Position numbers and translations under genes: made by a program. Positions 4,251 through 57,063 of a stretch of 64,000 nucleotides of DNA are shown here, in pieces (the first letter of the stretch is position 1; the number at the start of each line of letters is the position of its first letter). The notes under the pieces are model-generated. The model saw nothing but the letters and a program-made list of their open reading frames with translations, did not search any database and had not been told where the DNA came from. Source of the stretch: Octopus sinensis (taxonomy: Eukaryota); contig NC_043005.1 of assembly GCF_006345805.1 (NCBI RefSeq), positions 9,486,001 to 9,550,000 on the forward strand, read 5' to 3'.

Positions 4251-5488
4251 ATGGAAAGCGAACCGGTCCCAGCCAGCAGCTATACTTCAGCCACTGGAAG
4301 AAGTTTAACTGCAGACATGTTACAAGTTCGGGAGGTGAAGTTGGAGAAAAAAGAGCTAAAGGAGTTCAACAGACTTATCGAAAAGGAGGGAACGATTTGA
4401 CAGCTAGTATAACTAAACGGACAGTCATATATAGAACGCTGTCCACGGTAACGAAAAGAATTGAAATAGCTACGTTGGAAGCCACAGTGGAGAGTTTAAA
4501 GAAAGTAAAAGGCCTCACAACATTCTATATCAGGGGGGAAAAGTACGGCACAGTGGAAGTAAGGTTCGCGAGCGAACAGGACGTGATAAACCACTCCACT
4601 CTGGCGCTAAGGACACCGGGGTGGGTAATTCTGCCGACTTACTGTGGCAAACGAGTGGCCAGGGTAAGGATATGCAGAGTGCTCCCGGAGATTGAGGTAG
4701 CGTGGCTGGTTGCAGCCATTATGTACAACAGAAGAGGAAGCAAAATTTTTAAAAGTAACGATTTCGAAAGAGGTAAACTGATGGGGATACGACCTCGAGG
4801 TGACAGTCCAGGTCAGTTTGCAGGACTGGCACAAGATAGAAGAGGAAGTGATACTGCCGGAGGAAGTGAGATTAAGAGTAGTGGTGGAGGGAAGACTCGC
4901 CAACCTGTTACCAGTGTGCAGTAAGGGGACACACGAGAGCAAGGTGTCCCAAGAATGACGAGAAAGATGAACTGGAACAGCAGCAACAGGGTGACGAGCA
5001 GGAGCAAAATTCCGAAGTGGCGACCCCAGTGAGTGAGAAGTGTCCAGAGAAGGTGGAGGGGGAATATAAGGTGGTAACTAGGAAAAAGAAAAGGAAGGAA
5101 AACGTGGATTCACCGCCAAAGAGTTCACTGAAGAAGATGAAAGAAAATAAACAGCAAGAGACACAGCAGAACATTATCAACAAGGAAAACCAACGTAGAA
5201 AATCAAGTGGAACTACAGGAACAAATAACAAAAAGAATCAAAAGAGAAATGGCGTATTGTGACATTTTCGAAAAACACGATAATTGAAAAGAGTCGATAG
5301 TGAGAGTGAAGTTAACAACGGAATATTATCCAGAGAACAGCAAGGCGATTGTAATTAAAGAAGAGAGATGTGCAAGATTGAGAGAATTATTTGGATATAA
5401 GATAGATCTAGCAGGTGTACGCGTGGCGTTTGACGACTTGCCACCTGTAATAGATTATGAGGACCTAATACCGTACATAAGATGGTGA
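4251..5488 (+). pseudogene. Frameshifted L1/Tx1-like ORF1 (gag-like) remnant, copy 1
   Basis: ATG at 4251. Joined frames 4251-4400, 4397-~4730, ~4850-5262 and 5300-5488. Intact CX2CX4HX4C knuckle CYQCAVRGHTRARC at 4906-4947, followed by a Lys/Glu-rich tail. Homologous to 6352-7132 (KRTVIYRTLST, YGTVEVRF, PTYCGKRVARVR). Confidence 0.7.
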
Positions 5489-5578
5489 AAAAATGTAAGT
5501 AAATATTAGGGATTTTAATGACTATAAAACTGATACAGATAGGAAAAAAGGAGAAAAATGAAAAACTATGTATATAGG

Positions 5579-5958
5579 AGCACTCCGTCGGTTACGACGA
5601 TGAGGGTCCCAGCTGATACGATCAACGGAACAGCTTGCTCGTGGAATTAACGTGCAAGTGGCTGAGCACTCCACAGACACGTGTACCCTTAACGTAGTTC
5701 TCGAGGATATTCAGCGTGACACAGGGAGTGACAAGGCCGGCCCTTTCAAATACAGGTACAACAGAAACAGGAAGTAAGAGTGAGAGAAAGTTGTGGTAAA
5801 AGAGTACAGCAGGGATCGCCACCATCCCCTGTCGGAGCCTCGTGTAGCTTTTAGGTGTTTTCGCTCAATAAACACTCACAATGCCCGGTCTGGGAATCGA
5901 AACCGCGATCCTACGACCGCGAGTCCGCTGCCCTAACCACTGGGCCATTGCGCCTACA
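5579..5958 (-). mobile_element. tRNA-derived SINE, group A
   Basis: Minus-strand head GGCGCAATGGCCCAGTGGTTAGGG (A box) and GGTTTCGATTCC (B box), tail GTAACCGACGGAGTG, imperfect TSD gaaaaactat.ta. Other copies at 7700 and 21548. Confidence 0.9.
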
Positions 5959-6351
5959 CGAAAAACTATATAAAAACGTTTAACTAAAACATTTAAAATG
6001 GTGCTACGTGCGAGTGGGGAGCATGCAGCCCTTTCACGTCCATTATTATAATGCATCTTTCATTCATTCGTTTTGTGTTTTTTGTCCCCACTGTGGTGTC
6101 CTATCTGTCCTTGTACAGCCTCCCTCTCTGCATGAGTCTAAGTGCTCAAATAAAGAAATGAGTCATGAGTCAGTACATTCTGTTGTTGGTGGTGTTTTCT
6201 TTAACATGAGTGCGAATTGTTACACATTGTTATTTATAATTCTCGAAGGTCTCCCCGTGTGAGTGTACCACGATTTGTTAAATTACTTAAATTGCTGAAT
6301 TTTCGTCACTGTTTTGTTTGCATAGTATTCGAATCTGTTTATCACCCATCT

Positions 6352-7132
6352 ATGGTAGAATTGGAGAAAGGAAGAGAGATGAAGAGTGGACAAAGTTACG
6401 CAGCGGCAACTACACAAGGAATAAATGCCAACACCCAGGAAGTACGGGAAATTAAAACTGAACCAAGAAAATGGAAGGAAGGAAGCAAATTGCAGGAAAA
6501 GGAAGGAGCCAGTCGAAAACAGACTCTTCGAGAAGAACGGAGAAATAATGTGGCAAAGAGGTCGGTGGTATATAGGACCTTGTCCACGTCCTCGAACAAG
6601 ATAGAGGTCGTCCCGATAGAGGCAATAAAAGAGTGCCTTGAAAATGTCAAGAGGTTGACCTGTTTATACACGTGGAAGAAAGTACGGCACAGTGGAAGTA
6701 AGGTTTGGCAACGAAGAAGACGCCATAAGCCACTCCACTGTGCCGATAAGGACACTGGAATGCGTACTTCTGCCGACGTACTGTGGCAAACGCGTTGCTA
6801 GAGTAAGAATGGTGCTACGGTATGGAGAATGAGGTGAAAATCCTCAAGATAACGAGGACCAAAAATGACAATTGGTGGGAGTATGGTCTCGAGATGCCAT
6901 ACAGGTGAGTTTAAAAAACCTGTATGGCATCACAGAGGAAATCATACTCGTAGAAGACACTAGACTTCGAGTAGTAGTAGAAGGAATACAACCAACATGC
7001 TTCCTATGCGGCAAAAAAAGGGCATATGAAATGTGCCCTGAGAAGGAAAACGAAGCCGAGGAGCAAAAAGGTGAAAAGAAGAGTACCAAAGAGGTAGTAC
7101 AAATAAATTGGAGGACTCCTTCAGAGTCGTAA
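6352..7132 (+). pseudogene. Frameshifted L1/Tx1-like ORF1 remnant, copy 2 (diverged)
   Basis: KRSVVYRTLSTSSNKIE; after a frameshift YGTVEVRF and LLPTYCGKRVARVR; degenerate knuckle PTCFLCGKK...C. Confidence 0.65.
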
Positions 7133-7560: not shown

Positions 7561-7699
7561 TTTAGAGAGTTAGATTAAGAATAACAATAGAACAGTCAAG
7601 GAGTGAGATTTCAACTTATGAAACAAATGGGTAAATTAGCTGTCAGACCAACAGTTATTTTGTGTGTGCGTGTATACATGTATGTATATATGGATGGAA

Positions 7700-8075
7700 G
7701 CACTCCGTCGGTTACGACGACGAGGGTTCCGGTTGATCCGAATCAACGGAACAGCCTGCTCGTGAAATTATCGTCTAAGTGGCTGAGCACTCCACAGACA
7801 CGTGTACCCTTAACGTAGTTCTCGGGGATATTCAGCGTGACACAGAGAGTGACAAGGCCGGCCCTTTGAAATACAGGTACAACAGAAACAGGAAGTAAGA
7901 ATGAAAGTTATGGTGAAAGAGTACAGCAGGGATCACCACCATCCCCTGCCGGAGCCTCGTGGAGCTTTAGGTGTTTTCGCTCAATAAACACTCACAACGC
8001 CCGATCTGGGAATCGAAACTGCGATCCTATGACCGCGAGTCCGCTGCCCTAACCACTGGGCCATTGCGCCTCCAC
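7700..8075 (-). mobile_element. SINE, group A
   Basis: Full-length match to 5579-5958, with an approximate TSD acatgtat.tatat. Confidence 0.9.
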
Positions 8076-8334: not shown

Positions 8335-8567
8335 TATTTCTTTACTACCCACAAGGGGCTAAACACAGAGGGGACAAACAAGGACAGACAAACAGATTAA
8401 GCCGATTACATCGACCCCAGTGCGTAACTGGTACTTAATTTATCGACCCCGAAAGGATGAAAGGCAAAGTCGACCTCGGCGGAATTTGAACTCAGAACGT
8501 AGCGACAGACGAAATATGGCTACACATTTCGCCCGGCGTGCTAACGTTTCTGCCAGCTCGCCGCCTT
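8335..8567 (-). mobile_element. SINE, group C (short young form)
   Basis: Head GGCGGCGAGCTGGCAGAAACGTTAGC, B box GAGTTCAAATTCC, body GGTCGACTTTGCCTTTCATCCTTTCGGGGTCGATAAATTAAGTACCAG, tail GGGTAGTAAAGAAATA. Confidence 0.9.
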
Positions 8568-8729
8568 ATATTACACTGGCGATATCAGTGGGCGCGTCTC
8601 CAGTGAGAGGGATCGGGGCCTGCAACCAAACCTGTGAACGAAAAATTCCCCATAGGTGCGGATCATCAGCCCGCAGAGATCACATTCCTGTCCTTTGAAC
8701 AGACCACCCATCTTATTAAGAAATTAATT

Positions 8730-8910
8730 CCTGTCAGGTCGCTCCGAGTACTACTGGTAACATGTACCGCAGTACAACCAGTTGCATACTCAGCGTTATC
8801 GGCGAATAAACTAGTAATACCACTGAGTGTTCTTGTCTAGGAAGGACACCTTGTCGGACGGAAAACAAGCCCCTCAAAAGGAGAAACTCAAGAGTGTACG
8901 GCCATCCAAT
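8730..8910 (+). mobile_element. Fragment homologous to the repeat at 24570 (possible LINE 5' UTR)
   Basis: gtcaggtc..ggtaacatgta..cagtacaacc..ggacacc..aaaacaa..ctc..gagt..acggccatccaataa is shared with 24572-24766. Confidence 0.5.
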
Positions 8911-8968
8911 AATGTGTATGTGTGTATTCCAGGGAGGTATGCGCCGATACATATGTATAAAAATTCTG

Positions 8969-9374
8969 GGATCTTTTCGGTTTGAACGGCAGTTTTTTCT
9001 ATGAAATTGTCACCCATAATTATGACCCTAGTATCGATCTATTGCATTTCAATCTGTTTTAGGATTAGGGTTAGAGGTGGGGGGAAGGGTATCTTTTTTC
9101 TTCACAAATGTAAATAAACCCTATCTGTTTCTTAAACGAGGGACATATTCATACGGCACAGAATGTTTTTTCCCTCAATAGACCTCAGTGATTGGTTGAA
9201 ACTGTAAAAATTGAAGAAAAAACAACAACAAATATCTTACAAACTACAGAATTTTCTCAATAAAGCCAAGAGAAAAAGACGTTTTATAAACTCATTCTAC
9301 CAGTATACGAAGTTTAAAATTTTTTAGTTACCTAGAAATTATGTTAAAAACTGCCGTTCAAACCGAAAAGATCC
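8969..9374 (+). mobile_element. GG-ended MITE, copy M1 (Merlin-like candidate)
   Basis: Perfect TIRs GGATCTTTTCGGTTTGAACGGCAGTTTTT / AAAAACTGCCGTTCAAACCGAAAAGATCC, no ORF. Strand is assigned relative to the other copies. Confidence 0.9.
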
Positions 9375-9565
9375 CCAGTTGCATACTTAGCGTTATCGGC
9401 GAATAAACCAGTAATACCACCGAGTGTTCTTGTCAAGGAATGACACCTTGTCGGACGGAAAACAAGCCCCTCAAAAGGAGAAACTCAAGAGTGTACGGCC
9501 ATCCAATAATGTGTATGTGTGTATTCCAGGGAGGTATGCGCCGATACATATGTATAAAAATTCTG

Positions 9566-9971
9566 GGATCTTTTCGGTTTGAACGGCAGTTTTTTCTATG
9601 AAATTGTCACCCATAATTATGACCCTAGTATCGATCTATTGCATTTCAATCTGTTTTAGGATTAGGGTTAGAGGTGGGGGGAAGGGTATCTTTTTTCTTC
9701 ACAAATGTAAATAAACCCTATCTGTTTCTTAAACGAGGGACATATTCATACGGCACAGAATGTTTTTTCCCTCAATAGACCTCAGTGATTGGTTGAAACT
9801 GTAAAAATTGAAGAAAAAACAACAACAAATATCTTACAAACTACAGAATTTTCTCAATAAAGCCAAGAGAAAAAGACGTTTTATAAACTCATTCTACCAG
9901 TATACGAAGTTTAAAATTTTTTAGTTACCTAGAAATTATGTTAAAAACTGCCGTTCAAACCGAAAAGATCC
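9566..9971 (+). mobile_element. GG-ended MITE, copy M2
   Basis: Appears identical to M1, including the 11-bp deletion after the left TIR. Part of a 597-bp tandem duplication. Confidence 0.9.
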
Positions 9972-10318
9972 CCAGTTGCATACTTAGCGTTATCGGCGAA
10001 TAAACCAGTAATACCACCGAGTGTTCTTGTCAAGGAATGACACCTTGTCGGACGGAAAACAAGCCCCTCAAAAGGAGAAACTCAAGAGTGTACGGCCATC
10101 CAATAATGTGTATATGTGTATTCCAGGGAGGTATGCGCCATACATATGTATAAATATTCTGGACACTTTAGTGCACTATATACTATATTCCGGCAATCTA
10201 TTCGTGTGAATCCACATTCATTACACCTCTCGTTTTACAACCTTTAGCATTATCCATTGCCAAATATTTTCAAGCACACAGGTAAAGATCATTTGCTTGT
10301 GACAGATATTCTATGAAC

Positions 10319-10740
10319 GGATCTTTTCGGATTGAACGGCAGTTTTTTCTAGCGGTCTCATATGAAATTGTCAGCCATAATTATGACCCTAGTATCGATC
10401 TATTGCATTTCAATCTATTTTATGGTTAGGGTTATGGTTAGGGGTGGGGGGAAGGGTATCTTTTTTTCTTCACAAATGTAAATAAGCCCAATATGTTTCT
10501 TAAACGAGGGACATATTCATACGGCACAGAATGTTGTTTACCTCAATAGACGTCAGTGATTAGTTGAAATTGTAAAAATTGAAGAAAAAAACAACAAATA
10601 TATTACAAACTATAGAATTTTCTCAATAAAGCCAAGAGAAAAAGATGCTTTATAAACACATTCTACCAGTATACGAAGTTTAAAATTTTTTAGTTACCTA
10701 GAAATTATGTTAAAAACTGCCGTCCAAAGCGAAAAGATCC
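10319..10740 (+). mobile_element. GG-ended MITE, copy M3
   Basis: Same TIRs with a few substitutions. Flanked by a ~165-bp direct duplication (10154-10318 and 10741-10904). Confidence 0.9.
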
Positions 10741-11867
10741 ATATTCTGGACAATTTAGTGCACTATATACTATATTCCGGCAATCTATTCGTGTGAATCC
10801 AATTCATTACACCTTTCGTTTTACAACCTTTAGCATTACCCATAGCCAAACATTTTCAAACACACGGGTAAAAATCATTTGCTTCCGACAGATATTCTAT
10901 GAACATAAAACTATGAGAAATCCTTATCAAAAATATTCAGTCTCTCTACTGCTTCTCATTTGTTATTTAACTTCTAGAATGGATTCAATAAAAAGCATAA
11001 AACAGAAAGTTTTTAACCTGTCGTATAATTGTTCTGATATTTAATTTTAATTTCAATGCAATCACTTAGATTATTTTGTTTCTTTCCAAAAGTGTTCTAG
11101 CAAGAAATACGAGAATTACTTCGCATAAAGAATCCATTAGTACACTTAACATGCTCACTTGCTCCATATGATCAATAAATATCAGAATACATGGTTGACT
11201 ATAGTGCAGATTGATCGATCAATGCGTTTAAATGAATTGTGTTTCTTTTGCTAAGACATACGTCTACAGTCATTGTAATATTTAATGTTCGCACTCAACT
11301 GTCTGCGTTGATAAGTTTTTATTTTGTAGTTTTTTAAACCGTACGTGTAATGCATATGTTAGTCAGACTTTTCAGTCGGTTTCAGTGCGGTTTTTAGTTG
11401 TTATCGTTTGTAAAAGCATAAAAAAACTCACCTCTAATACTCTCCAACTTACAAACATATTTTCGTCAAAATATCTAATTTCAATACATGTTGCATGTAA
11501 ATACTTAGCGGATGAGGTACCATTCGTAACATACACCTAAAAGTTATTCTGGTTTACAAGTCCTGAAATTTTCTTTAAATTTAGGTAGAATTGTGAGAGC
11601 AATAATGCTTCACAGTATTTGTTCCAACTCTTTGAGTTCTGAGTTCAAATCTTGCTGAAGTCAACCTGATGGTTCATCCATTCTGGCGGCCTTTAAAGAA
11701 GAAAGATCCTTTCTGTGGAATAGTGATATCATAAGCACGTTAGACCGGACACTTTGTGATATTTTTACTAGCGTTTTACATTCTGAATTCAAATCCTACT
11801 TTAGCCTACATGGATGGTACACTCAACACGTTGCCCGTTTTCATACCACCACATAACCCGTTGGGTT

Positions 11868-12169
11868 TTTTGGTCCTTCTCGAGCCACATCTGGCTCATT
11901 AGGGCCGGTTTCCCAGTTTCCTTGGCGTATAGGTTCTCCACCTGGACGGAACTCCGGTCCGTCGTAGGTAAGCTGCAAGAGGCTGGAGGAAAGAGTGAGA
12001 GAAAGTTGTGGCGAAAGAGTAAGCAGAAGATTGCCATTACCTTCTGCCGGAGCCGCGTGGAGCTTAGGTATTTCGCTCATAAACACACACATCGCCCGGT
12101 CTGAGATTCGAGCCCGCGGTACCTCGACCGCGAATCTGCTGCTCTAACCACTAGGCCATGTGTATCCAC
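11868..12169 (-). mobile_element. SINE, group B
   Basis: Head and 5' body like group A, different 3' half (GACGGA..GG..TCCGTCCAGGTGG..GGAAACTGGGAAACCGGCCCTAATGAGCC). Second copy at 53289. Confidence 0.85.
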
Positions 12170-12845
12170 ATAACACGTTGGGTGTTTTAACAGAGCCCAT
12201 CGCATCACAAGCATTTGAGCTAGGATTTTCTGGTTTCAAAACACTTTTTTCCTTCTTTTCCACAAGTCATAAGCGTTCCCTTCTCTCCTGAACCAAAGTT
12301 TAACAAAATACTAAACCTCTCTTCTAAAACTGAGTGTGGCTGCTGTCATCTAATCAGGGAAAAGCTGAACATTAAGAATTCTTAGTAATTATAGGAATTT
12401 TGTTTTTATCATATTGGTTACAAATTAATCGTTAAGCCACTCTGATATGGCATTACAAATGAAGTTAACGTTAACATATTCTATGCAGAGCCATAAAAAG
12501 ACAAACTATGGCAAATCATGCGGTGTGGGGAAAAATCATTTGCAATCAGCCATTAACTAAAATCGTTTTGATTCAGAGATATGGAAGGCAATTCATCACA
12601 GATGGTTATTATTATAATCTCCTCTTTACGATTCTAGACAAATTCTTGATGACAGAATCATTAAGTAAATGTAGAATAATTAACACTTATATATGAGAAG
12701 AAATAAAGATTGTTCAAAGAAACAAATTAATATTAGACACTTTCAGTAAAGAAAGATAATTAAGTTAGCGTTAAAATATAATATTGGAAACAGTAGTATG
12801 CTAATTATTTTTGTCGTCTCATTTGAGCTATCCGTGAGGTCAATA

Positions 12846-13261
12846 GGATCTTTTCGGTTTAAACGGCAGTTTTTCTAGCGGTGTCATATGAAATTGACAC
12901 CCATAATTATGACAATAGTATCGATCTATTGCATTTTAATTTATTTTAGGGTTAGGGTTAGTTAGGGTTAGGAGGAAGGGTATCTTTTTTTCTTCACAAA
13001 TGTAAATAAACCCAGTCTGTTTCTTAAACGAGGGACATATTCATACGTACAGAATGTTTTCACCTCAATAGACGTCAGTGATTGGTTGAAATTGCAGAAA
13101 TTGAAGAAAAAAACAACAAATATCTTACGAACTATAGAATTTTCTCAATAAAGCCAAGAGAAAAAGATGTTTTATAAACACAATCTACCAGTATACAACG
13201 TTTAAAAGTGTTTAGTTACGTGGAAATTATTTTAGAAACTGCCGTTCAAACCGAAAGATTC
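12846..13261 (+). mobile_element. GG-ended MITE, copy M4, with 8-bp TSD
   Basis: GGTCAATA|GGATC...GATTC|GGTCAATA (12838-12845 and 13262-13269). Confidence 0.9.
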
Positions 13262-13814
13262 GGTCAATAGAACCGTTAAAGAATAATACTAATTAGATGT
13301 ACAGACAATCTTCTTTACCAAAAGAATATATTTGGTCAGCAATAATATTTCGATTCTAAAAAATACGCATCTTTGCTAGGTGGTAATATTTCGACCCTGA
13401 ACGAAGCAAAGCAAAGTTAGTCATTACCGTTCATTCAGAATTCAAATTGAAGAAATTATATACTATCAGGTCGTATATTCTTTGTTTCCATAAAAAACAG
13501 AAATAACTGCCAGGCTTTGGGAATAATATACGACATTTATTTGGCGTTTGTCGGTGGAAATGATGCCATAAAAACAAAACATAAAATATTTTCAAAACTT
13601 GATACCGTGCAGAAGATAAGATTGACAATAACTGCTAACAAATATTTTCACCCTAACAGACAAAAAACATTATGTCTTGTGTTGGACTCTAATGTGTTCG
13701 AATCAGAGACGTATAGTAGTATATGTGATTATATCCTCAAATATCTATTAATATTTCTTATATACTTGCACGATTCAAATAACTAGAAAAATAACTAAAT
13801 ATACAAAGTAATCT

Positions 13815-14238
13815 GGATCTTTTCGGTTTGAACGGCAGTTTTTAACATACTTTCTAGGTAACTAAAAAAATGTTAAACTTCGTATACTGGTAGAATGAGT
13901 TTATAAAACATCTTTTTCTCTTGGCTTTATTGAGAAAATTCTATAGTTTGTAAGATATTTGTTTGTTTTTTTTTTCAATTTCTGCAATTTCAACAAATCG
14001 ATGAGGTCCATTGAGTTAAAAAACATTCTGTGCCGTATGAATATGTCCCTCGTTTAAGAAACAGATTGGGTTTATTTACATTTGTGGAGAAAAAAAGATA
14101 CCCTTCCCCCCACTCCTAACCCTAACCCTAACCCTAAAACAGATAGAAATGCAATAGATCGATACTAGGGTCATAATTATGGGTGACAATTTCATATGAC
14201 ACCGCTAGAAAAAACTGCCGTTCAAACCGAAAAGATCC
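13815..14238 (-). mobile_element. GG-ended MITE, copy M5 (inverted)
   Basis: Perfect TIRs, reverse orientation, internal (CCCTAA)3. Flanked by a 65-bp direct duplication (13750-13814 and 14239-14303). Confidence 0.9.
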
Positions 14239-14807
14239 GATATTTCTTATATACTTGTACGATTTAAATAACTAGAAAAATAACTAAATATACAAAGTAA
14301 TCTTTCTCCCTATTATAGTATCAATTTCTTTGTATTATAACAGCGTTATATACACCATTTAGAAATTTGGCTAATCATAAATGGTAAATTATTTATTCCG
14401 TTTTGCTTTATAGTCGGGCGTAGCTTCTTAAACTGATGTAAATATAACAACGTTTCTTTGTTTTAAATGGAATAATAGTATTTAGCCACGAGATCAATCA
14501 AAGCAAATTACAAAAACAATTACGCTACTCTCATTCTCATACATAGAATCTTTGTATTGAAACATAAAAATAGTTCCACTAATCTACTACTATGTATATT
14601 TAGTTAATTTTCTAGTTATTTTTAAATAATCTTTAAAATAAATATAATCTGTTACGCTTTGGATTTGGTCGCAGATCTGGGCTTACCTAAAAAATCTTAA
14701 ATAAGATTCACACTTGCATCATGGAATGTCTCCCTACATATTTGAAATAAAAAGAGATTTTTCTGATATGTCTCTCATGGATATCGATATCTATCTATCT
14801 ATCTATC

Positions 14808-15205: not shown

Positions 15206-15232
15206 CATATGTATATACATATATATATATAT

Positions 15233-15460
15233 GTCTTTACTACCCACAAGGGGCTAAACACAGAGGAGACAAACAAGGACAGACAAAGGGATTAAGTCGA
15301 TTACATCGACCCCAGTACGTAACTGGTACTTTATTTATCGACCCCGAAAGGATGAAAGGCAAAGTCGACCTCGGCGGAATTTGAACTCACAACGTAACGC
15401 AGACGAAATACCGCTAAGCATTTCGCCCGGCGTGCTAACGTTTCTGCCAGGTCGCCGCCT
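15233..15460 (-). mobile_element. SINE, group C
   Basis: Full match to the 8335-8567 copy, inserted in (AT)n. Confidence 0.9.
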
Positions 15461-20255: not shown

Positions 20256-20664
20256 CAAGAGAGCTCATCGTCATTCTGTTTTGATCCGTGTCTGTCCAGT
20301 TGTCCGGTCCACAACAAAATTATTGGTTGATTTAGCATGCTTTGGTGATGAATATTGCATTGATAGGTATGCGAATAATTTCGTCTCTACGACAGAGAAT
20401 TTAGCTCGAAATATTAAGGCAATTGTCATCTTTCATCATACAATTTTATACATGAATTTTGTTTAACTTTTGACACGTATAAGACGTCGTGAATAATTAT
20501 TGGAATTTGCATGGTTTAGTATGTGTTGCGACATAGTTGGGTTTTAACCGTTATTTGCTCATGACTATTTGATAGGTATTTATAGAAAGGTACAGCGGTG
20601 TTGATTACATAGTTATTGTGGAAATGCGGTAGTACAGCAGTTATTGTGGATATGCGGTAATAAA

Positions 20665-20896
20665 AGACGGCGAGCTAGCAGAAACGTTAGAATGCCGGGC
20701 GAAATGCGCAGCGGTATTTCGTCTGCCGTTACGTTCTGAGTTCAAATTCCGCCGGGGTCGACTTTGCCTTTCATCCGTTATGGTTCGATTAAATAAGTAC
20801 CAGTTACGTACTGGGGTCGATGTAATCGACTTAATCAGTTTGTCTGTCCTTGTTTGTCCTCTCTGTGTTTGGCCCCTTGTGGGTAGTAAAGAAATA
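20665..20896 (+). mobile_element. SINE, group C
   Basis: Full-length short form with apparent TSD GGTAATA. Confidence 0.9.
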
Positions 20897-21547: not shown

Positions 21548-21930
21548 GTGGAGGCGCAATGGCCCAGTGGTTAGGGCAGCGGACTCGCGGTCGTAGTATA
21601 TCTGTTTCGATTCCCACACCGGGCATTGTGAGTGTTTATTGAGCGAAAACACCTAAAGCTTCACAAGGCTCCTGCAGGGGGTGGTGGTGAACCCTGCTGT
21701 ACTCTTTCACCACAACTTTCTCTCACTCTTTCTTCCTGTTTCTGTTGTACCTGTATTTCAAAGGGCCAGCCTTGTCACTCTCTGTGTCACGCTGAATCTC
21801 CTCGAGAACTACGTTAAGGGTACACGTGTCTGTGGAATGCTCAGCCACTTGCACGTTAATTCCACGAGCAAGCTGTTCCGTTGATCGTATCAGCTGGGAC
21901 CCTCATCGTCGTAACCGACGGAGTGCTCCA
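21548..21930 (+). mobile_element. SINE, group A, with 14-bp TSD
   Basis: TSD atagtttgagttcg (21534-21547) / atagtttgagatcg (21931-21944). Confidence 0.92.
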
Positions 21931-23912: not shown

Positions 23913-24569
23913 CTTTTTAAGATATTGAAATAAAAACACGCATGTCAACGTTAAAATGCCTCTCTGCGTTTCCTCGTCTTGTTAGAAATAGAAACCAAAT
24001 AGAAACCAAACATACTTAACTCTCATTATATCTTCGAATAGTGATACATTAGAGAATTTCGATCTAGCTTTACCTTCACAGCTCTATACCTACTGCTAGG
24101 TCTATTTTCAATAGATCTGTTAAAACCAAGTTGGTTTGGTATGAACAAAAATATCCTTTATATACGTGACAGTTTTCATAAGATAAATAAACTTATAAAC
24201 ACTCATCTTTTCTCCATCATCTTCGTACATGTTTGAAAGCAATTTGGAATTAAAGATTTTGCCGCTCTTCACCAAATCTATTATTGAATTGATTGGTTGA
24301 ATTACAACTGAAACTTCTCTTGATAATTGGTTAGCACTGACCTCGTCCGAGAAGTTTCACTTTGTATAGTTTCTAGGCAACTTATTTCATAGCTTCTTAT
24401 ATATCCTATAAAAATATACGCTACGCGTGATTGTATCTACTTATGTATGTATGTATGTATGTATGTATGTATGTATGTATGTATGTATGTATGTATGTAT
24501 GTATTTATGTATGTATGTATGTATTATGTATGTATGTATGTATGTATGTATGTATTTATTTATTTATTT

Positions 24570-25100
24570 ATGTCAGGTCACTCTCGAGTGCTATTGGTAA
24601 CATGTAACCCAGTACAACCTATTGCATGGTCGGGTCGTCGGCAACTAAGCCGACAACCCCACCAAGCTTGCTTGGTGAGGAGGGTGATTATTGGACACCC
24701 TGTGGCCTGAAAAACAAAACCCGTCAAAGGGCGGAGGAACTCTTGAGAGTCAACGGCCATCCAATAAGGCTCTATCATGCGCGGGGACATAGAAATAATC
24801 GGACTGAATACCCGATCGCGCGGTTAAACTATTGGGAGTGAAGGACTCGTAGCCTTTGTTAGGGCATCCTTCTAGGAGAAGGTAACTCAGGTAACTGGGA
24901 TAACTCCGACATAAAATCTGCAGCTCAGTGGTTACCGATAATGGTGACTTGCTCTTCTTTTCAGATTATGGCTGCTGTTGCTTAGTGAGTTAGATTGACT
25001 CAGTGTACAGCCTTTCCTCACTTTAAAAAATCTTCTTGCACAGGCATTGCACGATAACAACATTGATTAAGCTTCATGCAATGGCCATAGTCGATAAGGA
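24570..25100 (+). mobile_element. Interspersed repeat, probably a non-coding 5' region of an RTE-like LINE
   Basis: Homology to 8730-8910. The class call rests only on recalled resemblance (CTAGGAGAAGG..AACTC motif); there is no ORF. Confidence 0.4.
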
Positions 25101-26333: not shown

Positions 26334-26704
26334 CTTTTCTGCTCTAGGCACAAGGCCCTAAATTTTGGGGGAGAGGCCAACTGGCACTTAATATATCGAC
26401 CCCGAAAGGAGGAAAAGCAAAGTCGGCCTCAGCGGAATTTGAGCTCAGAACATAAAGACAGACGAAATACCTATTTTTTACTACCCACAAGGGGCTAAAC
26501 ACAGAGGGAACAAAGAAGGACAGACACACGGATTAACTCGATTACATCGACCCCAGTGCGTAACTGGTACTTATTTAATCGACCCCGAAAGGATGGAAGG
26601 CAAAGTCGACATCGGCGGAGTTGTGAACTCAGAACGTAGCGGCAGACGAATAACCGCTAAGCATTTCGCCCGGCGTGCTAACGTTTCTGCCAACTCGCCG
26701 CCTT
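26334..26704 (-). mobile_element. Dimeric SINE, group C (head, body, tail, second body, alternative tail)
   Basis: On the minus strand the tail GGGTAGTAAAAAATA runs into GGTATTTCGTCTG, then a second body, ending GGCCTTGTGCCTAGAGCAGAAAAG. Confidence 0.8.
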
Positions 26705-27317
26705 AAAGATTCTTAAATCTGCTGGAAAATTCTTTCATCTTAATTTGTACCTTAGTGGCAGTAGATAGTAACAAATATTTCATCGCAGATAGGTACTAAC
26801 AATAAAGCTGATACTGTGTTTTAAGATATATACGTAGACGTTTGCGGAAAAACTAAGAGAAATAGTCTATAGGCACAGGCGTAGCTGTGTGATAAGAAGC
26901 TTACTTCCGGTTCCGGTTGTTTAGTTTTCTTCACTCACCTGTAGAAGCCGCCACGCTGGTCTGCAGCGGACGAAAGTTGTTTCTGAAAGAGGCTCTGCTG
27001 TAAGGTAAGACTTTTAGCTTTGTGGGTCTAGTTGAGGTACGTTGTTTGTGATATTTATTTTTTGTTCAAGCAAGGAGTTCTCACTGAATTCTGCGCTTTG
27101 GTCTGCCTGCAGTAGAGCATTTTGTTTTTCTCACTTAATTATGAGAATTGCTATTTGGAGGCGTATCCCGCCCCCAAATTTAATTTAATTTGAGAATTGT
27201 GTTATTCTCAATTAATTGTGAGAACTGTTCCTCTTTAATTTCCTGGGATTTTTTAAAAAACAAATTCGAGGAATTGGACAATAATTGTGAGAAGCTGTCT
27301 TCCAGTTGAATGTTTTT

Positions 27318-30047: not shown

Positions 30048-30401
30048 TGTGTGTGTATATGTATATATATATATATATATTATATATATATATATTATAT
30101 ATATATATATATATATACAATGAAGGGTGAAATTAATTAATTTGGAACAATTATCAATTACACCAAGTAGTCTTCGGCATGTAAAAGCCTCATTCGAGGA
30201 AAATTTAAGTAATACTAAGCAATTAAGTGTTTAGCAACGAATTGCCTTACCACACACCGAATTTAGAAATAGCAGTCAAAGAGATTATAGCTATTTCTTC
30301 TACTAAAAGGGAGATCACAGTAAAGGCACAGCATTTGAAAGGCAAACACAAACAGTAAAAGAGAATGAATTAACGGCAATCTATCATACAGTTTTAAGTC
30401 A

Positions 30402-30487
30402 CCTACGGACGTACGTTTCGAGATCAAGTCTTAGGAAGCATAAGAAGATAACTCTACTTACCCAGACTTCTTCTTTCATCAGGCAGG
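30402..30487 (-). ncRNA. Type-I hammerhead ribozyme, unit 1 (1-nt defect in stem I)
   Basis: cctgc-CTGATGA-stem II (aagtc/gactt, extended)-c-GAAA-CGTACG-TC-cgtagg. Confidence 0.6.
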
Positions 30488-30966
30488 ATACAAACAATAT
30501 GAATGATGAATATGAATTTTGAATACTAGAAGGCACCAACTCAATCAGTATCAGAGCGAGCTAGAAGCCACAGCTAGTATCACCAAATTCAAAGTATGAA
30601 TGAAGCTTGTGTCACCAGTCCCTCCCACCAGCGTGTAGCCAAGACAAAGTGCCGTGGTCATTACTGGGATGAATATGGTTTGAGTAACAATGAAGGGTGA
30701 AATTAATTTGGAACAATATCAATTACACCAAGTAGTCTTCGGTATGTAAAAGCCTCATTCGAGAAAAATTAAGTAATACTAAGCAATTAAGGGTTTAGCA
30801 ACGAATTGCCTTACCACACACCGAATTTAGAAATAGCAGTCAAAGAGATTATAGCTATTTCTTCTACTAAAAGGGAGATCACAGTAAAGGCACAGCATTT
30901 GAAAGGCAAACACAAACAGGTAAAAGAGAATGAATTAACGGCAATCTATCATACAGTTTTAAGTCA

Positions 30967-31054
30967 CCTACGGACGTACGTTTCGAGATCAAGTCTTAGG
31001 AAGCATAAGATTAGATAACTCTACTTTACCAACTTCTTCTTTCATCAGCGCAGG
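30967..31054 (-). ncRNA. Type-I hammerhead ribozyme, unit 2
   Basis: Stem I cctgcg/cgtagg (6 bp, one GU), core CUGAUGA and GAAA, palindromic stem III ACGUACGU, GUC cleavage predicted between 30973 and 30972. Caveat: the 10.1-11.1 pair is A-C rather than G-C. Confidence 0.72.
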
Positions 31055-31498
31055 ATACAAACAATCATGAAGATTGAATATTGAATTTTGAGATACTAGA
31101 AGGCACCAACTCACTCAGTTCAGAGAGCGAGCTAGAACCACAGCTAGTATCACAAATTCAAAGTATGAATGAAAGCTTGTGTCACCAGTCCTTCCACCCG
31201 CGTGTAGCCAAGACAAAGTGCCGTGGTCATTTACTGGATGAATATGGTTTATGAGTACAATGAAGGGTGAAATTAATTAATTTGGAACAATTATCAATTA
31301 CACCAAGTAGTCTTCGGTATGTAAAAGCCTCATTCGAGGAAAATTTAAGTAATACTAAGCAATTAAGGGTTTAGCAACGAATTGCCTTTTGCCTTTCAAA
31401 TGCCGTGCCTTTACTGTGATCTCCCTTTTAGTAGAAGAAATAGCTATAATCTCTTTGACTGCTATTTCTAAATTCGGTGTGTGGTAAGGCAATTCGTT

Positions 31499-42644: not shown

Positions 42645-42879
42645 TATTTCTTTACTACCCACAAGGGGCTAAGAACAGAAAGGACAAACAAGAACAGACA
42701 AAGGGATTAAGTCGATTATATCGACCACAGTACGTAACTACTACTTAATTTATCAACCCCGAAAGGATGAAAGGCAAAGTCGACCTCGGCGGAATTTGAA
42801 CTCAGAACGTAACGGCAGACGAAATACGGCTACGCATTTCGCCCGGCGTGCTAACGTTTCTGCCAGCTCGCCGTCTTAT
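42645..42879 (-). mobile_element. SINE, group C, with 15-bp TSD
   Basis: accaatagcgttacc at 42630-42644 and 42880-42894. Confidence 0.93.
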
Positions 42880-45666
42880 ACCAATAGCGTTACCAATGCC
42901 ACTAACCCCACCAACCTCACCGACACCACCAACACCACCTGCACTGCCAACTACATGAACTTCACTAAGTCCACCAACACTGGAGCCGTCCCTACGATAC
43001 TGCCATCATTACAACACGTTCTGGTCAACACTTATGTCTTCAACACGCCCTGATCAGGGAATAATCTGTTTGTTGGCTCAATCTTTAACGAACAGCAACT
43101 TACGACTCTCTTAAAAATCACATTGTAATATTTTGCGAAATGGGAAGAGAAGTGAAATATCGTAGTTTCGGTGGCCAAGCTATTTCTTAGGTATAATTCT
43201 CTCAAAAGGAAAAGAAAGCGCATATCTTTTTCGAACATAGTTTCGAATGATCAGAGCTAACCTCGGACTATAAAAAGGACGACGACCATGCTTCCATTGC
43301 CATTGCATTTAATGCTACAAGCATTGCAGCCACAAGTACAGCACTGCCAAGTACCATTACCACAATAATTGCCACAACGAGTGCCCAGACCATTAAAAGC
43401 TGCAACCTTCGAAACGGGTTTCAACATTTCAGTAAAAATAAAGGACAAACGAGAAACTGAAATCTCTCAAAATGAACTTGTATCGACAAGGTTTGCGAAG
43501 AGAACTAAATAGATAGAGATAAGGGAAGATTGACAGATTAAGAGAGAAGCAAAGAAAAAGGGGAAGGAAGAAAGAGAGGGAGAGAGAAGGAAAGTAAGAA
43601 GTAAAGAAAGACAGTAAGCACAACGAGAGAATGGGTTGAAAAACTGATAGCAAGGAGCAGAAACAAGCTTTGCAAAAGGAACTAAACAGAGAGAGAGAGA
43701 TAAGGAAGGATAGTGTGATTAAAAGAGAAGGGGAGAGAGAGAGAGTGTAAGAGAAAGCGAAGGACTAAAGAATGAAAGTATAAAGAAGGAAAAAGAGAGG
43801 GAATGAAAGAAAGATTAAAAGGAAGCGCGAATGAATAAAGTGACTGACAGCAAGGAGGAAAGACTAGAAGAGAGAGAGAGAGAGAGAGAGAGATGTTTGT
43901 GAGCGGCAGGAAAAGATTTTGGTTATCTGCCTATCACTCACAATTTGTTTTTGCGTTTGTCTCTTTCATTTGTTGGTTCTGTTGTATTTTGAGTGTATAT
44001 TTTGTTGGCAGCCATTTTCAGGACTACGTCTCATTTGATTGACTTGGAGGAGGCTCCTGCCACTGTTCTCATCTGATGAAGGAGACTACAATATAAAGCA
44101 AAAGATAGTGATAAAAACAATTCGTAAAAGAGATTGCAATGGGATTTGCTAGACGGATCGTCGAAAGAATAAAGTAAATTGAAGGAGCTGAATAGAAGGA
44201 AATTTTGTGAGAAAGGAAGAGAAACCGAAAGATAAAAACAAATGTAAACAAACGAAATGTTACAAAACCTAACAACCAAAAATGACAGGAGAAGCGAAAT
44301 AATAAAAAAAGAAGAAAAAAAAAGCAATGAGAATCAGAAGACATAAATAAATGTGAAAGAGAAGAATCAGAAACGAAGTAGAAAAGACAAACTGAATCGT
44401 TGAAATAATTTGAAGTAGTGGATTGTAACCATCATATTGATCGTTATGGGCTGAGCAAAACCATGTGTAAACGGGTGTTTTATGTAACTGCATTTACGGA
44501 TCTACTTATATGAGCATGTATATACAATATATGTATACAGACACGCACGCACACACAGAGACATATATACGCAAATTTATGTATGTGTATTTGTCTATGT
44601 ATGTGAATTCGCACTCGTAGGAATGTACGGGTGCTTATAGATGTACATGGGCGTACATCTATGAGTGTAAGATATACACGAATATACAGCCGTGCAAGTA
44701 GTGATGTATGAAGCTATCTCTACGTCTATGCGTATCTTCACTTCACAGCATATGTGTGCGAGTGTGTATGCGGGGGTTGGGGTGCGGATTGCGCTTATAT
44801 AATTTTAAATCATAATATATTAACGGCCATGAACATATTGGAAATTATGTGCATGCACACGGACACACGAATGAATATGATTGCATGTTATAAGGAATTG
44901 TGTGCTAAAAGAAAATCTCTAAATCTTAATGTGAATCATGAATATCTTTATGTCTTTTGTTGTACCATAACCTCGCCAGTGCAATGTATTTTGGAAGATC
45001 GCAGTCTATATTTTTGACTTTTCTTCCCTTTTTTAAAAAAAAAATCCTGACAGTATGTTTAAGAACTTTTATCTTCTAAGAGTGTTCTTTTCTTTCACGA
45101 AATGAACCATAATTTATGTCGTGTCTTATCTCGAGAAATAAATCCGTTTTTCACATCCGTAATACTGTATATCACTGTAAATGCATTTGAGCTCTCAGCT
45201 TATTGAAAAATGATGCTTTTTGCTTAGGTTACACATTTTCGGGACTTTCCTGCAAAATGTCAAACGGAGATTACATAGTTCAGATGAGTTGACATGCTCC
45301 ATTAATGAATATTGCACCTTGGTTTGTAATTGAAATAGATATCATACGCCATTGTTATTCTGACGACAGAGATTGAGAATCACAGATTCTTTAAGGTTTC
45401 TGACCTGCAGAAAATAAATTGAATATTTTCAAGGACTGTAATATGTTTCACACAAAAACAAGAGTACTCCTGCGTAATATATGCCTTGGAGGTTGGAGAG
45501 AGCAGGAGAGCCACTAATTTTTCAAGTGTTGACAATTTCAATATATTTATTTACGCGCGAATATTGTAAGGTTGTTAAAACAATCCATTCAGCTGCGCGG
45601 GGAGGAAAGAGGTTCGATGCATCATTAAACAGCGTGAAATACTGTAACGGAGTTGGTAAACCGGTT

Positions 45667-46882: not shown

Positions 46883-47258
46883 AGGCGGTTAGCTGGCCAG
46901 AATAGTGAGCAGGCTGGTCAAAATGCTTTGTGGTATTTCGTCTGCCGTTACGTTCTGAGTTCAAATTCCGCCGAGGTCGACTTTGCCCTTCATCCATTCG
47001 GGGTCGATAAATTAAGTACCAGTTACGCACTGTGGTCGATATAATCGACTTAATCCGTCTGTCTGTCCTTGTTTGTCTCCTCTGTGTTTCTCCCCTTGTG
47101 GATAGTAAAGAAATAGGTATTTCGTCTGCCTTTTGCCCTTGGTTAAAATTCCGTCGAAGTCGATTTTTTTCTCCCACCATTTTAGGGTCGATAAAATAAG
47201 TACTAGTTGAACACTGAGGTCAAATTTGCTGGCCGAGTACCAAACTTTGAAACAAATA
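46883..47258 (+). mobile_element. Dimeric or nested SINE C
   Basis: Direct repeat ggtatttcgtctgcc at 46932-46946 and 47116-47130 brackets a young body. A diverged second body follows. Confidence 0.8.
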
Positions 47259-48169: not shown

Positions 48170-48518
48170 TGTGTGTGTGTGTGTATGTTTGTGTGTGTGT
48201 TGTGTGTGTGTGTGTGTGGAACAAGGGTCGGAATTTAAATGGAATGACAAGTAATTATACTCTGAAATTCTAACAACTTGTCTACATCTTCCGATGTAAT
48301 TTGTTTGATTTTAGTTCCTGTATTCAAAAATAATAATTCAGAATAGAGTACCAATACACAAAGGGTCTGGACACCTGTAGAACCGAGATATATGCATATA
48401 AGGTATGAGCAAATATGACAACCGAAAACTCGATCCATTCTAAGCGTAGTGCTTTATAACATAACTGCATACGTATATACATATATATACATACATAGAT
48501 GAATATATATATGTGTGT

Positions 48519-48752
48519 AAAAGGCGGCGAGCTGGCAGAAACGTTAGCACGCCGGGCGAAATGCGTTGTCGTATTTCGTCTGCCGTTACGTTCCGAGTTC
48601 AAATTCCGCCGAGGTCGACTTTGCCTTTCATCCTTCCGGGATCGATAAATTAAGTACCAGTTACGCACTGGGGTCGATGTAATCGACTTAATCCGTTTGT
48701 CTGTCCTTGTTTGTCTCCTCTGTGTTTAGCCCCTTGTGGGTAGTAAAGAAAT
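48519..48752 (+). mobile_element. SINE, group C
   Basis: Full short form, flanked by atatatatatgtgtg on both sides. Confidence 0.92.
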
Positions 48753-48774
48753 ATATATATATATATGTGTGAGA

Positions 48775-56527: not shown

Positions 56528-57063
56528 GAACAACAACAACATTATCTTCAACAACGAAGACTACACAAAGTGTGATATAAATATGTTTGACTAGTGTCTA
56601 GCACTGGCAAAATGTATAGTGACAGTGCGTATGATGTTTCAGAAAGTGCTATTGACAGCTTGGAATTATGGCAATTCTGAGTTACATTGGATGGTCCACT
56701 CGGGAAGCTATAAATCGTAAACAGCTTGACTTGCTAATAAATAAATCAGACAACAGTCCTTTACTTAATGCATAGATACATATCTACGTAACTACATAAA
56801 GGCAAGTATACATACATACATACATACATACATACATACATACATACATACATCATACATACATACATACATACATACCCACACACATACATACATACAC
56901 ACACAGACATATATATACATATATACATATGTATAGTATATATATATATTTCTATATATTATATATATATATGTATATCTATATATATATATGTATATAA
57001 TGTGTTGTGTGCATATATATATATATATGTATATATATATATTTATATGTATATATAATATAT

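What the first reader, a model, noticed from the sequence alone, without database searches (positions are those of the whole stretch)
8778..14303. A MITE flanked by direct duplications of 8, 65, 165 and 191 bp
Seen: M4 has an ordinary 8-bp TSD, but M5 is flanked by 65 bp (3 mismatches), M3 by ~165 bp and M1/M2 by ~191 bp of duplicated host DNA, each abutting both TIRs to the base. Established: cut-and-paste superfamilies make fixed short TSDs, and GG-starting TIRs with 8-9-bp TSDs fit Merlin/IS1016. Long variable flanking duplications are known from P-element hybrid-end insertion, Ac/Ds alternative transposition and a few bacterial IS. Inference: this family frequently duplicates host DNA, and the long type accounts for 3 of 4 independent sites here.
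Basis: partly seen in the sequence, partly recalled or inferred. Interest (0 to 1): 0.8.

Follow-up and report, generated by a model that had tools for sequence, protein, structure and literature searches.

The report
MITE cluster with transposase-made flanking duplications
Five copies of a small non-coding DNA transposon sit within 5.3 kb of an animal genome, and three of them are bracketed by 64-191 bp duplications of host DNA that are best read as fossils of aberrant ("hybrid-end") transposition, a process known from fly P elements and maize Ac/Ds but rarely seen preserved in a genome.

Summary
A 406-424 bp MITE (29-bp perfect TIRs starting with GG) has five copies in the window, all between 8969 and 14238. 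M4 has a plain 8-bp TSD. M5 is flanked by 64/65 bp of duplicated host DNA, M3 by 165 bp and M1/M2 by 191 bp, and each duplication ends exactly at a TIR.

These are not long TSDs. Three results reshape the reading:
- M1 and M2 are identical, and the middle 191-bp copy is a chimera of the outer two. M1/M2 is therefore a recent unequal crossover on an older A-M-A structure.
- The 191-bp and 165-bp duplications overlap by exactly 8 bp (ATATTCTG), the family's TSD length. Both therefore start from one ancestral simple insertion, whose two junctions survive on different copies.
- All new junctions have zero microhomology.

The best model is one insertion, then two hybrid-end (sister-chromatid/homologue) insertions, one to each side, then the crossover. 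A separate such event explains M5.

This is a new member of a known kind (P-element HEI; Ac/Ds alternative transposition; 3 fossils among 7611 maize hAT copies). Merlin affiliation is plausible but not shown. The claim that the family often does this could not be tested, because no other copies were reachable.

The parts
8778..8968 (.). A1, first copy of the 191-bp host segment. Its last 8 nt (AAATTCTG) are the left TSD copy of the inferred ancestral insertion.
   Evidence: The boundary 8777|8778 is contiguous in a diverged paralogue at 24553-24770.
8969..9374 (+). M1, a MITE copy of 406 bp
   Evidence: It is 100 % identical to M2.
9375..9565 (.). A2, a chimeric copy: nt 1-142 are identical to A3 and nt 68-191 are identical to A1. 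This marks an unequal crossover between A1 and A3.
9566..9971 (+). M2, a MITE copy of 406 bp and the recent duplicate of M1
   Evidence: P of 0 differences = 3e-7 if it were as old as the A1/A3 split
9972..10161 (.). A3, the third copy of the 191-bp segment. It runs on into B1 as an intact empty site.
10154..10161 (.). T = ATATTCTG, the 8 bp shared by the end of A3 and the start of B1. This is the inferred target site (TSD) of the ancestral simple insertion.
   Evidence: It also occurs as AAATTCTG at 8961-8968 and 9558-9565 (just left of M1 and M2) and as ATATTCTG at 10741-10748 (just right of M3).
10154..10318 (.). B1, the first copy of the 165-bp host segment
10319..10740 (+). M3, a MITE copy of 422 bp
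10741..10904 (.). B2, the second copy of the 165-bp segment (164 nt; 10 mismatches and 1 indel against B1). It starts with T directly after the right TIR of M3.
12838..12845 (.). Left 8-bp TSD of M4 (GGTCAATA)
12846..13261 (+). M4, a MITE copy of 416 bp. It is the most diverged copy (8-9 %), has a 1-bp deletion in its right TIR, and is an ordinary insertion.
13262..13269 (.). Right 8-bp TSD of M4 (GGTCAATA)
13751..13814 (.). C1, the first copy of the 64-bp host segment (65 bp if 13750 is counted)
13815..14238 (-). M5, a MITE copy of 424 bp, inverted relative to M1-M4
14239..14303 (.). C2, the second copy. G14239 is either the mutated first base of a 65-bp repeat or one extra base; the 64 bp that follow carry 2 mismatches against C1.

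Best explanation
The flanking repeats are tandem duplications made by alternative (hybrid-end) transposition of a cut-and-paste MITE. They are not long TSDs.

Write the original host sequence as x-A'-T-B'-y, where T = ATATTCTG. The inferred history is:
1. The MITE inserted normally at T and made an 8-bp TSD (allele R: x-A'T-M-T-B'-y).
2. After replication, transposase paired the right end of M on one chromatid with the left end of M on the sister. It inserted this hybrid pair into a nearby site on the homologue (or on the rejoined sister). With the target at the start of A', the chromatid arm x-A'T-M joins A'T-B'-y, giving A-M-A.
3. A second event of the same kind from allele R, with the target at the end of B', joins x...A'T-B' to M-T-B'-y, giving B-M-B. 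Together the two events give x-A-M-A'T B'-M-T B'-y.
4. Much later, an unequal crossover between the diverged A1 and A3 added one [A-M] unit (M2 plus the chimeric A2).
5. An independent hybrid-end event around a simple M5 insertion made C-M5-C. M4 is an untouched simple insertion.

Shown:
- the architecture and the base-exact junctions;
- the 8-bp overlap of A and B;
- the chimeric A2 and M1 = M2;
- the absence of microhomology at the new junctions.

Inferred:
- that transposase strand transfer made the new junctions;
- which molecule was the target (homologue or sister), and the order of steps 2 and 3.
For: - Every duplication ends exactly at a TIR terminus on the inner side. On the outer side it ends at host DNA with no element there. 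Zhang et al. use this same criterion to separate transposition-made tandem duplications from NAHR, BIR and FoSTeS.
- A3 and B1 overlap by exactly 8 bp, ATATTCTG. That equals the TSD length shown by M4. The same 8-mer lies directly left of M1 and M2 and directly right of M3. Both junctions of one ancestral 8-bp-TSD insertion therefore survive, but on different copies. If the two boundaries were independent, an exact 8-bp overlap would have a chance of roughly 1 in 100 to 1 in 400 (my estimate).
- A script that applies insertion, two hybrid-end joins and one crossover to the joined flanks reproduces the observed order of 8700-10960. The only differences are point changes and small internal indels.
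- The three novel junctions (M|A', B'|M, C|M5) have 0 nt of microhomology.
- The boundary x|A1 is contiguous in an older paralogue at 24553-24770, so there is no footprint or missing element there.
- M1 and M3 have the same orientation, as the model requires.
- The A, B and C repeat divergences (3.7 %, 6.1 %, 3.1 %) and the M1-M3 divergence (5.2 %) do not differ significantly. This fits one period of activity.
- M1 = M2, and A2 is the 5' part of A3 joined to the 3' part of A1.
- All five copies lie within 5.3 kb of a 64-kb window, as expected from local reinsertion.
- Precedents: P-element HEI and Ac/Ds SCT/RET, and fossil duplications of 116-1262 bp next to maize dhAT elements.
Against: - No reciprocal deletion allele, no R or empty allele, and no transposase are available. 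Transposase involvement is therefore inferred from anatomy alone.
- The donor copy at T is absent from this haplotype. The model needs the target to have been an empty or already rearranged homologue, or else precise repair through the 8-bp repeat.
- Two separate events from the same donor plus a crossover is a multi-step history. For C-M5-C nothing beyond the exact abutment separates this model from its rivals, and the odd base G14239 next to the TIR needs a later substitution.
- In maize such fossils are very rare (3 of 7611). Three in one 5.5-kb stretch needs either special local conditions or ascertainment bias.
Confidence: 0.6

Rival explanations
1. NAHR between clustered elements, then excision. 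Three independent simple insertions sat at x|A, at T and at B|y. Unequal crossovers between these direct MITE copies duplicated the intervening host DNA. The outer and central copies were later lost by precise excision, leaving A-M-A and B-M-B.
For: - It also explains the 8-bp overlap at T, because an element once sat there with its TSD.
- Local clustering of copies is observed.
- NAHR did occur at this locus, as the chimeric A2 shows.
Against: - It needs about 8 events (3 insertions, 2 NAHR, 3 perfectly precise excisions) against 3 for hybrid-end insertion.
- No footprint or duplicated 8-mer remains at 8777|8778, and the paralogue is contiguous there.
- Elements with 8-bp TSDs usually leave footprints on excision (my own knowledge). 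Zhang et al. make the same argument.
Confidence: 0.12
2. Breakage and repair without strand transfer. One version is transposase cuts at a single TIR end followed by end-joining to a nearby break on the sister chromatid. The other is replication-fork stalling at the TIR hairpin with template switching (FoSTeS/MMBIR). Either would copy the flank again.
For: - As single-stranded DNA the element folds into a 29-bp TIR stem whose base coincides with the element termini (-58 kcal/mol, z = -5.9).
- The window carries other tandem duplications of similar period that do not involve this element.
Against: - All three novel junctions have 0 nt of microhomology and fall exactly at the last TIR base. Template-switch junctions normally use 2-5 nt of microhomology and scatter around a stall site.
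- Blunt end-joining that loses and gains no base three times out of three is unlikely.
- The model does not predict an intact empty site (A3-B1) between two copies.
Confidence: 0.12
3. True long target-site duplications. In a single integration the two transposon ends attack target strands 64-191 bp apart, for example across one nucleosome, and gap filling duplicates the interval.
For: - It needs only one event per site.
- The repeats abut both TIRs exactly.
- 165 and 191 bp are close to chromatosome and nucleosome-repeat lengths (my own observation; speculative).
Against: - It gives no reason for the A and B duplications to overlap by exactly the canonical 8 bp.
- The same family makes a normal 8-bp TSD at M4.
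- I know of no eukaryotic DDE transposase that makes staggers of this size.
Confidence: 0.07
4. Assembly artefact: repeat-induced misassembly created the duplicated flanks.
For: M1 and M2 are 100 % identical. A2 could arise if an assembler traversed a graph cycle through the stretch of at least 75 bp that is identical between A1 and A3.
Against: - A1/A3, B1/B2 and C1/C2 differ by 3-6 %, including indels, and the M copies differ by 4-9 %. They are distinct old sequences, not one sequence written twice.
- At most the copy number of the 597-bp unit is in doubt.
Confidence: 0.04

Closest known systems
P-element hybrid element insertion (HEI) in Drosophila (Gray, Tanaka & Sved 1996; Preston, Sved & Engels 1996; listed as references; content from my own knowledge)
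   Same: - A single element is enough.
- Left and right ends from sister chromatids insert together nearby, typically on the homologue.
- The product keeps a mobile element with a direct duplication (or a deletion) immediately next to one end.
- Sizes run from a few bp upward.
- Repeated rounds from the same element are possible.
   Different: - HEI was seen de novo and depends on transposase. Here there are only diverged fossils.
- The superfamily differs (the P element has 31-bp TIRs beginning CATGATG).
- The element here is a non-autonomous MITE of about 420 bp.
- Duplications to both sides of one donor site are preserved on a single haplotype.
Ac/Ds alternative transposition in maize (sister-chromatid and reversed-ends transposition), and the fossil tandem duplications next to dhAT elements in B73 (PMC3744419; PMC4270019)
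   Same: - Tandem direct duplications end precisely at transposon termini.
- One outer endpoint lacks an element.
- The 8-bp TSD logic holds.
- The fossils are small (116-1262 bp, 93-99 % identical), comparable with 64-191 bp at 94-97 % here.
- Arrays of duplications separated by elements are known (bz1-m4-D6856).
   Different: - RET needs two nearby elements with reversed ends. Its product is TE-segment-TE-segment, with the first TE keeping both TSDs.
- Here the donor copy is gone, each duplicated pair holds one element, and no second element is needed.
- Frequency: 3 of 7611 hAT insertions in maize, against 3 events among 5 copies here (a biased sample).
Merlin / IS1016-like DNA transposons and their MITEs (PMC8101967)
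   Same: Terminal 5'-GG, TIRs of at least 24 bp (29 bp here) and an 8-bp TSD.
   Different: - No transposase gene with matching TIRs was found, so there is resemblance but membership is not shown.
- I found no report of alternative transposition for Merlin in the searches I ran.
MITE-derived tandem repeats and satellite seeds (review PMC12628747)
   Same: A MITE sits inside a tandem unit that has begun to amplify by unequal crossover (597-bp unit, 2.3 copies).
   Different: The described cases amplify sequence internal to the MITE, or whole MITEs. Here the unit is one MITE plus 191 bp of host DNA, and the first duplication was probably made by transposase.

Membership tests
MITE (non-autonomous TIR DNA transposon) | Terminal inverted repeats | tested here: met
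   29-bp perfect TIRs in M1 and M5. The TIR 24-mer is found at 9 of 10 ends with at most 3 mismatches.
MITE (non-autonomous TIR DNA transposon) | Target-site duplication of fixed short length | tested here: met
   M4 has GGTCAATA, 8 bp. A second 8-bp site, ATATTCTG, is inferred from the A/B overlap. That is only two sites.
MITE (non-autonomous TIR DNA transposon) | Short, non-coding, in several diverged copies | tested here: met
   406-424 bp; five copies at 91-96 % identity, plus one identical pair. No ORF of 120 aa or more anywhere in 8778-14303.
MITE (non-autonomous TIR DNA transposon) | Dispersed copies elsewhere in the genome and an autonomous partner with the same TIRs | not testable with these tools
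   There are no copies outside 8969-14238 in the window. There are none in the metagenome, prokaryotic-genome or viral collections.
Merlin superfamily | TIRs of 24 bp or more with a conserved terminal 5'-GG | tested here: met
   GGATCTTTTCGG..., 29 bp. The criterion is taken from PMC8101967.
Merlin superfamily | 8- or 9-bp TSD | tested here: met
   8 bp
Merlin superfamily | Mobilised by a DDE_Tnp_IS1595-type transposase | not testable with these tools
   The window encodes no DNA transposase. The only Pfam hits are RVT_1 on LINE fragments.
hAT superfamily (the alternative family with an 8-bp TSD) | Short TIRs beginning with the YARNG-type consensus | tested here: not met
   The termini are GGATC. 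The consensus itself is from my own knowledge.
Products of alternative transposition (HEI / SCT / RET) | Duplication endpoints coincide exactly with transposon termini, with the element at the junction of the tandem copies | tested here: met
   Met for A-M-A, B-M3-B and C-M5-C
Products of alternative transposition (HEI / SCT / RET) | No element and no footprint at the outer endpoint (this separates it from NAHR between elements) | tested here: met
   No element at 8777|8778, 10904|10905, 13750|13751 or 14303|14304. Absence of a footprint is checked only at 8777|8778, through a paralogue of about 80 % identity.
Products of alternative transposition (HEI / SCT / RET) | The original TSD of the donor insertion is kept next to the element on the donor side only | tested here: met
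   ATATTCTG/AAATTCTG lies left of M1 and M2 and right of M3. The opposite sides carry unrelated sequence.
Products of alternative transposition (HEI / SCT / RET) | A matching 8-bp target duplication shared with a reciprocal deletion product | not testable with these tools
   This needs other alleles or individuals.
Products of alternative transposition (HEI / SCT / RET) | Dependence on the cognate transposase | not testable with these tools
   This needs an experiment.

The most novel reading that the evidence does not exclude
This Merlin-like MITE family, or its transposase, has an intrinsically high tendency to pair ends from different chromatids and to reinsert within about 200 bp. Short tandem duplications of host DNA would then be a routine by-product of its movement, not a 1-in-thousands accident. 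That would make the family a systematic source of small tandem duplications and composite satellite seeds in this genome. It would also be the first natural animal system outside the P element for studying alternative transposition. An even more radical variant is that some of the repeats (for example C, 64 bp) are true nucleosome-scale staggered integrations. That variant is not excluded, but the 8-bp overlap at T speaks against it for A and B.
Probability: 0.2. Interest if true: 0.7.

Novelty: new member of a known kind. Interest (0 to 1): 0.45.

Why it matters
Alternative transposition is a demonstrated way for cut-and-paste transposons to duplicate, delete and shuffle host DNA. Direct evidence, however, comes from only a few systems: Drosophila P elements, maize and snapdragon hAT elements, and recently Arabidopsis VANDAL21. 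Preserved genomic fossils are very rare (3 of 7611 in maize).

This locus keeps, on one haplotype, both junctions of a vanished donor insertion and duplications to its left and right. The order of events can therefore be read from the sequence alone. If the pattern holds across the family, three things follow:
- alternative transposition would be extended to another superfamily and to MITEs in an animal;
- there would be a concrete route from a MITE to a composite MITE-plus-host tandem repeat, since the 597-bp unit has already started to amplify;
- TE annotation pipelines, which assume a fixed TSD length, would need to allow for such copies.

If it does not hold, this is a well-resolved single case of a known mechanism.

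Tried and rejected
- Collecting more copies of the family. Exact scans with the TIR 23-mer and with an invariant internal 27-mer found nothing in JGI metagenomes. The TIR 23-mer also found nothing in GTDB genomes or IMG/VR. The family-wide flank-length distribution could therefore not be computed.
- Identifying the organism. A LINE reverse-transcriptase fragment (63246-63917, - strand) gave only about 40-60 % identical CR1/jockey-like hits from many animals, one of them from the cephalopod Argonauta hians. The best long contig (L001) shares no DNA with the window and carries no copy of the element. The host is an animal rich in SINEs and microsatellites. 'Cephalopod' is only a guess.
- Autonomous partner. 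The window encodes no DNA transposase.
- Structured RNA or tRNA. There are no Rfam matches and no tRNA genes.
- A simple tandem duplication of [flank + element]. Rejected, because it would leave a second element at one outer end.
- One long duplication or composite insertion by re-replication. The predicted internal order (M-T-B'...A'-T-M) does not match the observed M-A'-T-B'-M. A simultaneous origin of the three A copies is excluded by the chimeric A2 and by M1 = M2.
- Sequential hybrid-end events from one moving element. Rejected on paper, because after the first event the element no longer lies at T. The donor allele must have persisted on a sister, a homologue or in the population.
- The 7-nt match ATATTCT near the end of B as microhomology. 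The junction does not fall at it, so it was not used.
- Phylogeny of the copies to test whether M1 and M3 are sisters. The alignment is star-like, with mostly private changes, and is uninformative.

Full report
**1. The observation**

The window is animal-like DNA. It has several copies of two SINE-like repeat families, many microsatellites and LINE reverse-transcriptase fragments, and no structured RNA or tRNA genes.

The 24-nt terminus GGATCTTTTCGGTTTGAACGGCAG occurs 9 times with at most 3 mismatches, against 0 expected by chance. All matches lie between 8969 and 14238. They define five copies of one element:

| Copy | Coordinates | Strand | Length |
|---|---|---|---|
| M1 | 8969-9374 | + | 406 bp |
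| M2 | 9566-9971 | + | 406 bp |
| M3 | 10319-10740 | + | 422 bp |
| M4 | 12846-13261 | + | 416 bp |
| M5 | 13815-14238 | - | 424 bp |

- The TIRs are 29 bp and perfect in M1 and M5.
- No ORF of 120 aa or more lies anywhere in 8778-14303.
- Copies are 91-96 % identical, except M1 = M2 at 100 %.
- As single-stranded DNA the element folds through its TIR stem (-58 kcal/mol, z = -5.9).

| Flank repeat | Copies | Length | Differences |
|---|---|---|---|
| M4 TSD (GGTCAATA) | 12838-12845, 13262-13269 | 8 bp | none |
| A | A1 8778-8968, A2 9375-9565, A3 9972-10161 | 191/191/190 nt | A1-A3: 7 mismatches + 1 indel |
| B | B1 10154-10318, B2 10741-10904 | 165/164 nt | 10 mismatches + 1 indel |
| C | C1 13751-13814, C2 14240-14303 | 64 nt | 2 mismatches |

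C is 65 nt with 3 mismatches if 13750/14239 is counted. Each repeat fails to extend by even one base beyond its ends, and the inner ends touch the first or last TIR base.

**2.

*(a) M1/M2 is secondary.*
- A1 and A2 differ at five positions, all within the first 67 nt.
- A2 and A3 are identical over the first 142 nt and differ only in the last 49 nt.
- A2 therefore has no private change. It is the 5' part of A3 joined to the 3' part of A1, which is the signature of an unequal crossover between A1 and A3.
- M1 and M2 have no difference in 406 nt. About 15 differences would be expected if they were as old as the A1/A3 split (P = 3e-7).
- The older state was therefore A1-M-A3.

*(b) The A and B duplications overlap by exactly 8 bp.*
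- A ends in ...ATATTCTG and B begins with ATATTCTG (10154-10161).
- The same 8-mer lies immediately left of M1 and M2 (as AAATTCTG, one substitution) and immediately right of M3.
- Eight bp is the TSD length shown by M4.
- The left and right junctions of one ordinary insertion at ATATTCTG are therefore both present, but on different copies. Between them lies an intact empty site (A3 running into B1).

*(c) The three novel junctions have no microhomology.* This holds for the right end of M joined to the start of A, for the end of B joined to the left end of M, and for the C junction with M5.

*(d) The outer boundary 8777|8778 is contiguous in an older, roughly 80 %-identical paralogue at 24553-24770*. 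Nothing is missing or added there.

**3. The mechanism I commit to**

Write the host sequence as x-A'-T-B'-y, with T = ATATTCTG.

1. A simple insertion gives allele R: x-A'T-M-T B'-y.
2. After replication, transposase synapses the right end of M on one chromatid with the left end of M on the sister. Both ends carry the same 29-bp TIR. It inserts the pair nearby on the homologue. With the target at the start of A', the arm x-A'T-M is joined to A'T B'-y, giving A-M-A followed by a natural empty site.
3. A second such event from R, with the target at the end of B', joins ...A'T B' to M-T B'-y. Together the two events give x-A-M-A'T B'-M-T B'-y.
4. A later unequal crossover between A1 and A3 adds one [A-M] unit.

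A script that applies exactly these joins to the host flanks and one element copy reproduces the observed order of 8700-10960. The only differences are point changes and small internal indels.

C-M5-C needs one independent event of the same kind. M4 is an untouched simple insertion.

The divergence of the repeats (A 3.7 %, B 6.1 %, C 3.1 %) and of M1 against M3 (5.2 %) does not differ significantly. This fits one old burst of activity.

Shown: the anatomy, the 8-bp logic, the crossover, and the lack of microhomology. Inferred: strand transfer by a transposase, the identity of the target molecule, and the order of the two events.

**4. Rivals**

- *NAHR between three clustered insertions, then three perfectly precise excisions.* This gives the same structure and also explains the 8-bp overlap. 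It needs about eight events instead of three, and it leaves no trace where traces are usual. Zhang et al. used the same argument.
- *Template switching or end-joining.* This is disfavoured by three base-exact junctions with no microhomology.
It gives no reason for an exact 8-bp overlap (my estimate of the chance is roughly 1 in 100 to 1 in 400), and it conflicts with the normal TSD at M4.
- *Misassembly.* This cannot explain repeats that differ by 3-6 %. Only the copy number of the 597-bp unit is open to that doubt.

**5. Comparison with what is known**

In function this is closest to P-element hybrid element insertion. In HEI, sister-chromatid ends insert into the homologue and leave a duplication or a deletion next to a retained element (references listed; content from my own knowledge). 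It is also close to Ac/Ds alternative transposition:
- De novo tandem duplications there end at Ac termini.
- Three fossils of 116-1262 bp were found among 7611 maize hAT insertions.
- McClintock's bz1-m4-D6856 allele has three duplications separated by Ds elements.

Differences here:
- a MITE with Merlin-like ends (5'-GG, 29-bp TIR, 8-bp TSD; criteria);
- no second element is needed;
- the donor copy is gone;
- duplications lie on both sides of one donor site.

Merlin membership is not shown, because no transposase partner could be sought.

**6. Limits and verdict**

- No other copy of the family could be reached, and the organism was not identified.
- The claim that the family often duplicates host DNA therefore rests on one cluster that was selected for looking odd.

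Verdict:
The duplications are products of alternative transposition rather than long TSDs, and they represent three events rather than three of four independent sites.
- Novelty: a new member of a known kind. Interest: 0.45.

Noticed in passing
window 10425-10445, 12945-12975, 14117-14140 (inside M3, M4, M5): The MITE carries an internal tract of telomere-type repeats, (TTAGGG)2-4 with variants. Exact TTAGGGTTAGGG occurs in the window only inside copies of this element (3 matches against 0.01 expected).
   Followed up: partly
window 30116-31498: A tandem array with a period of about 565-575 bp and 2.2 copies (98-100 % identical in long blocks). It ends in a 111-bp inverted copy of part of the unit (31388-31498 is the reverse complement of 30236-30346). 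It lies just upstream of LINE-like ORFs at 31.9-34.5 kb. It may be tandem 5' monomers of a LINE with a fold-back junction.
   Followed up: partly
window 56981-58397; also 61027-61319 and 224-421: Further tandem duplications that do not involve the MITE. Their periods are about 572 bp (91 % identical, microsatellite-rich), about 147 bp and about 100 bp. Three arrays in this window have periods of 565-597 bp, which may or may not be coincidence.
   Followed up: no
window 14588-14627 (- strand) versus 13777-13810 and 14262-14299: A 34-38 nt inverted copy (94 % identical) of the 3' part of host segment C lies about 285 bp downstream of C2. Before M5 arrived, C may have been one arm of an older inverted-repeat element.
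   Followed up: partly
window 24553-24770 versus 8713-8912: A diverged paralogue (about 75-84 % identical) of the host DNA spanning the x|A1 boundary. The MITE cluster therefore sits inside an older, unclassified repeat.
   Followed up: partly
window 8335-8570, 15230-15460, 20657-20896, 26472-26705, 42645-42880, 46883-47115, 48518-48753; also 7681-8075, 5567-5959, 21548-21927: Two abundant SINE-like families. One is about 236 bp, with at least 7 copies at 88-94 % identity. The other is about 400 bp, with at least 3 copies at about 91 %. ARAGORN finds no tRNA-like gene in the window.
   Followed up: partly
window 10154-10161, 13751-13758, 10305-10311: The inferred donor site ATATTCTG, the first 8 nt of C (ATATTTCT) and a 7-mer near the end of B (ATATTCT) resemble one another. 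This may hint at a target preference for ATATT(T)CT, but there are too few sites to judge.
   Followed up: no
window 4540-4671 and 6679-6810: Two ORFs (4397-4924 and 6217-6801, + strand) share an 83 %-identical stretch. They have no Pfam match and are probably fragments of another repeat family.
   Followed up: no
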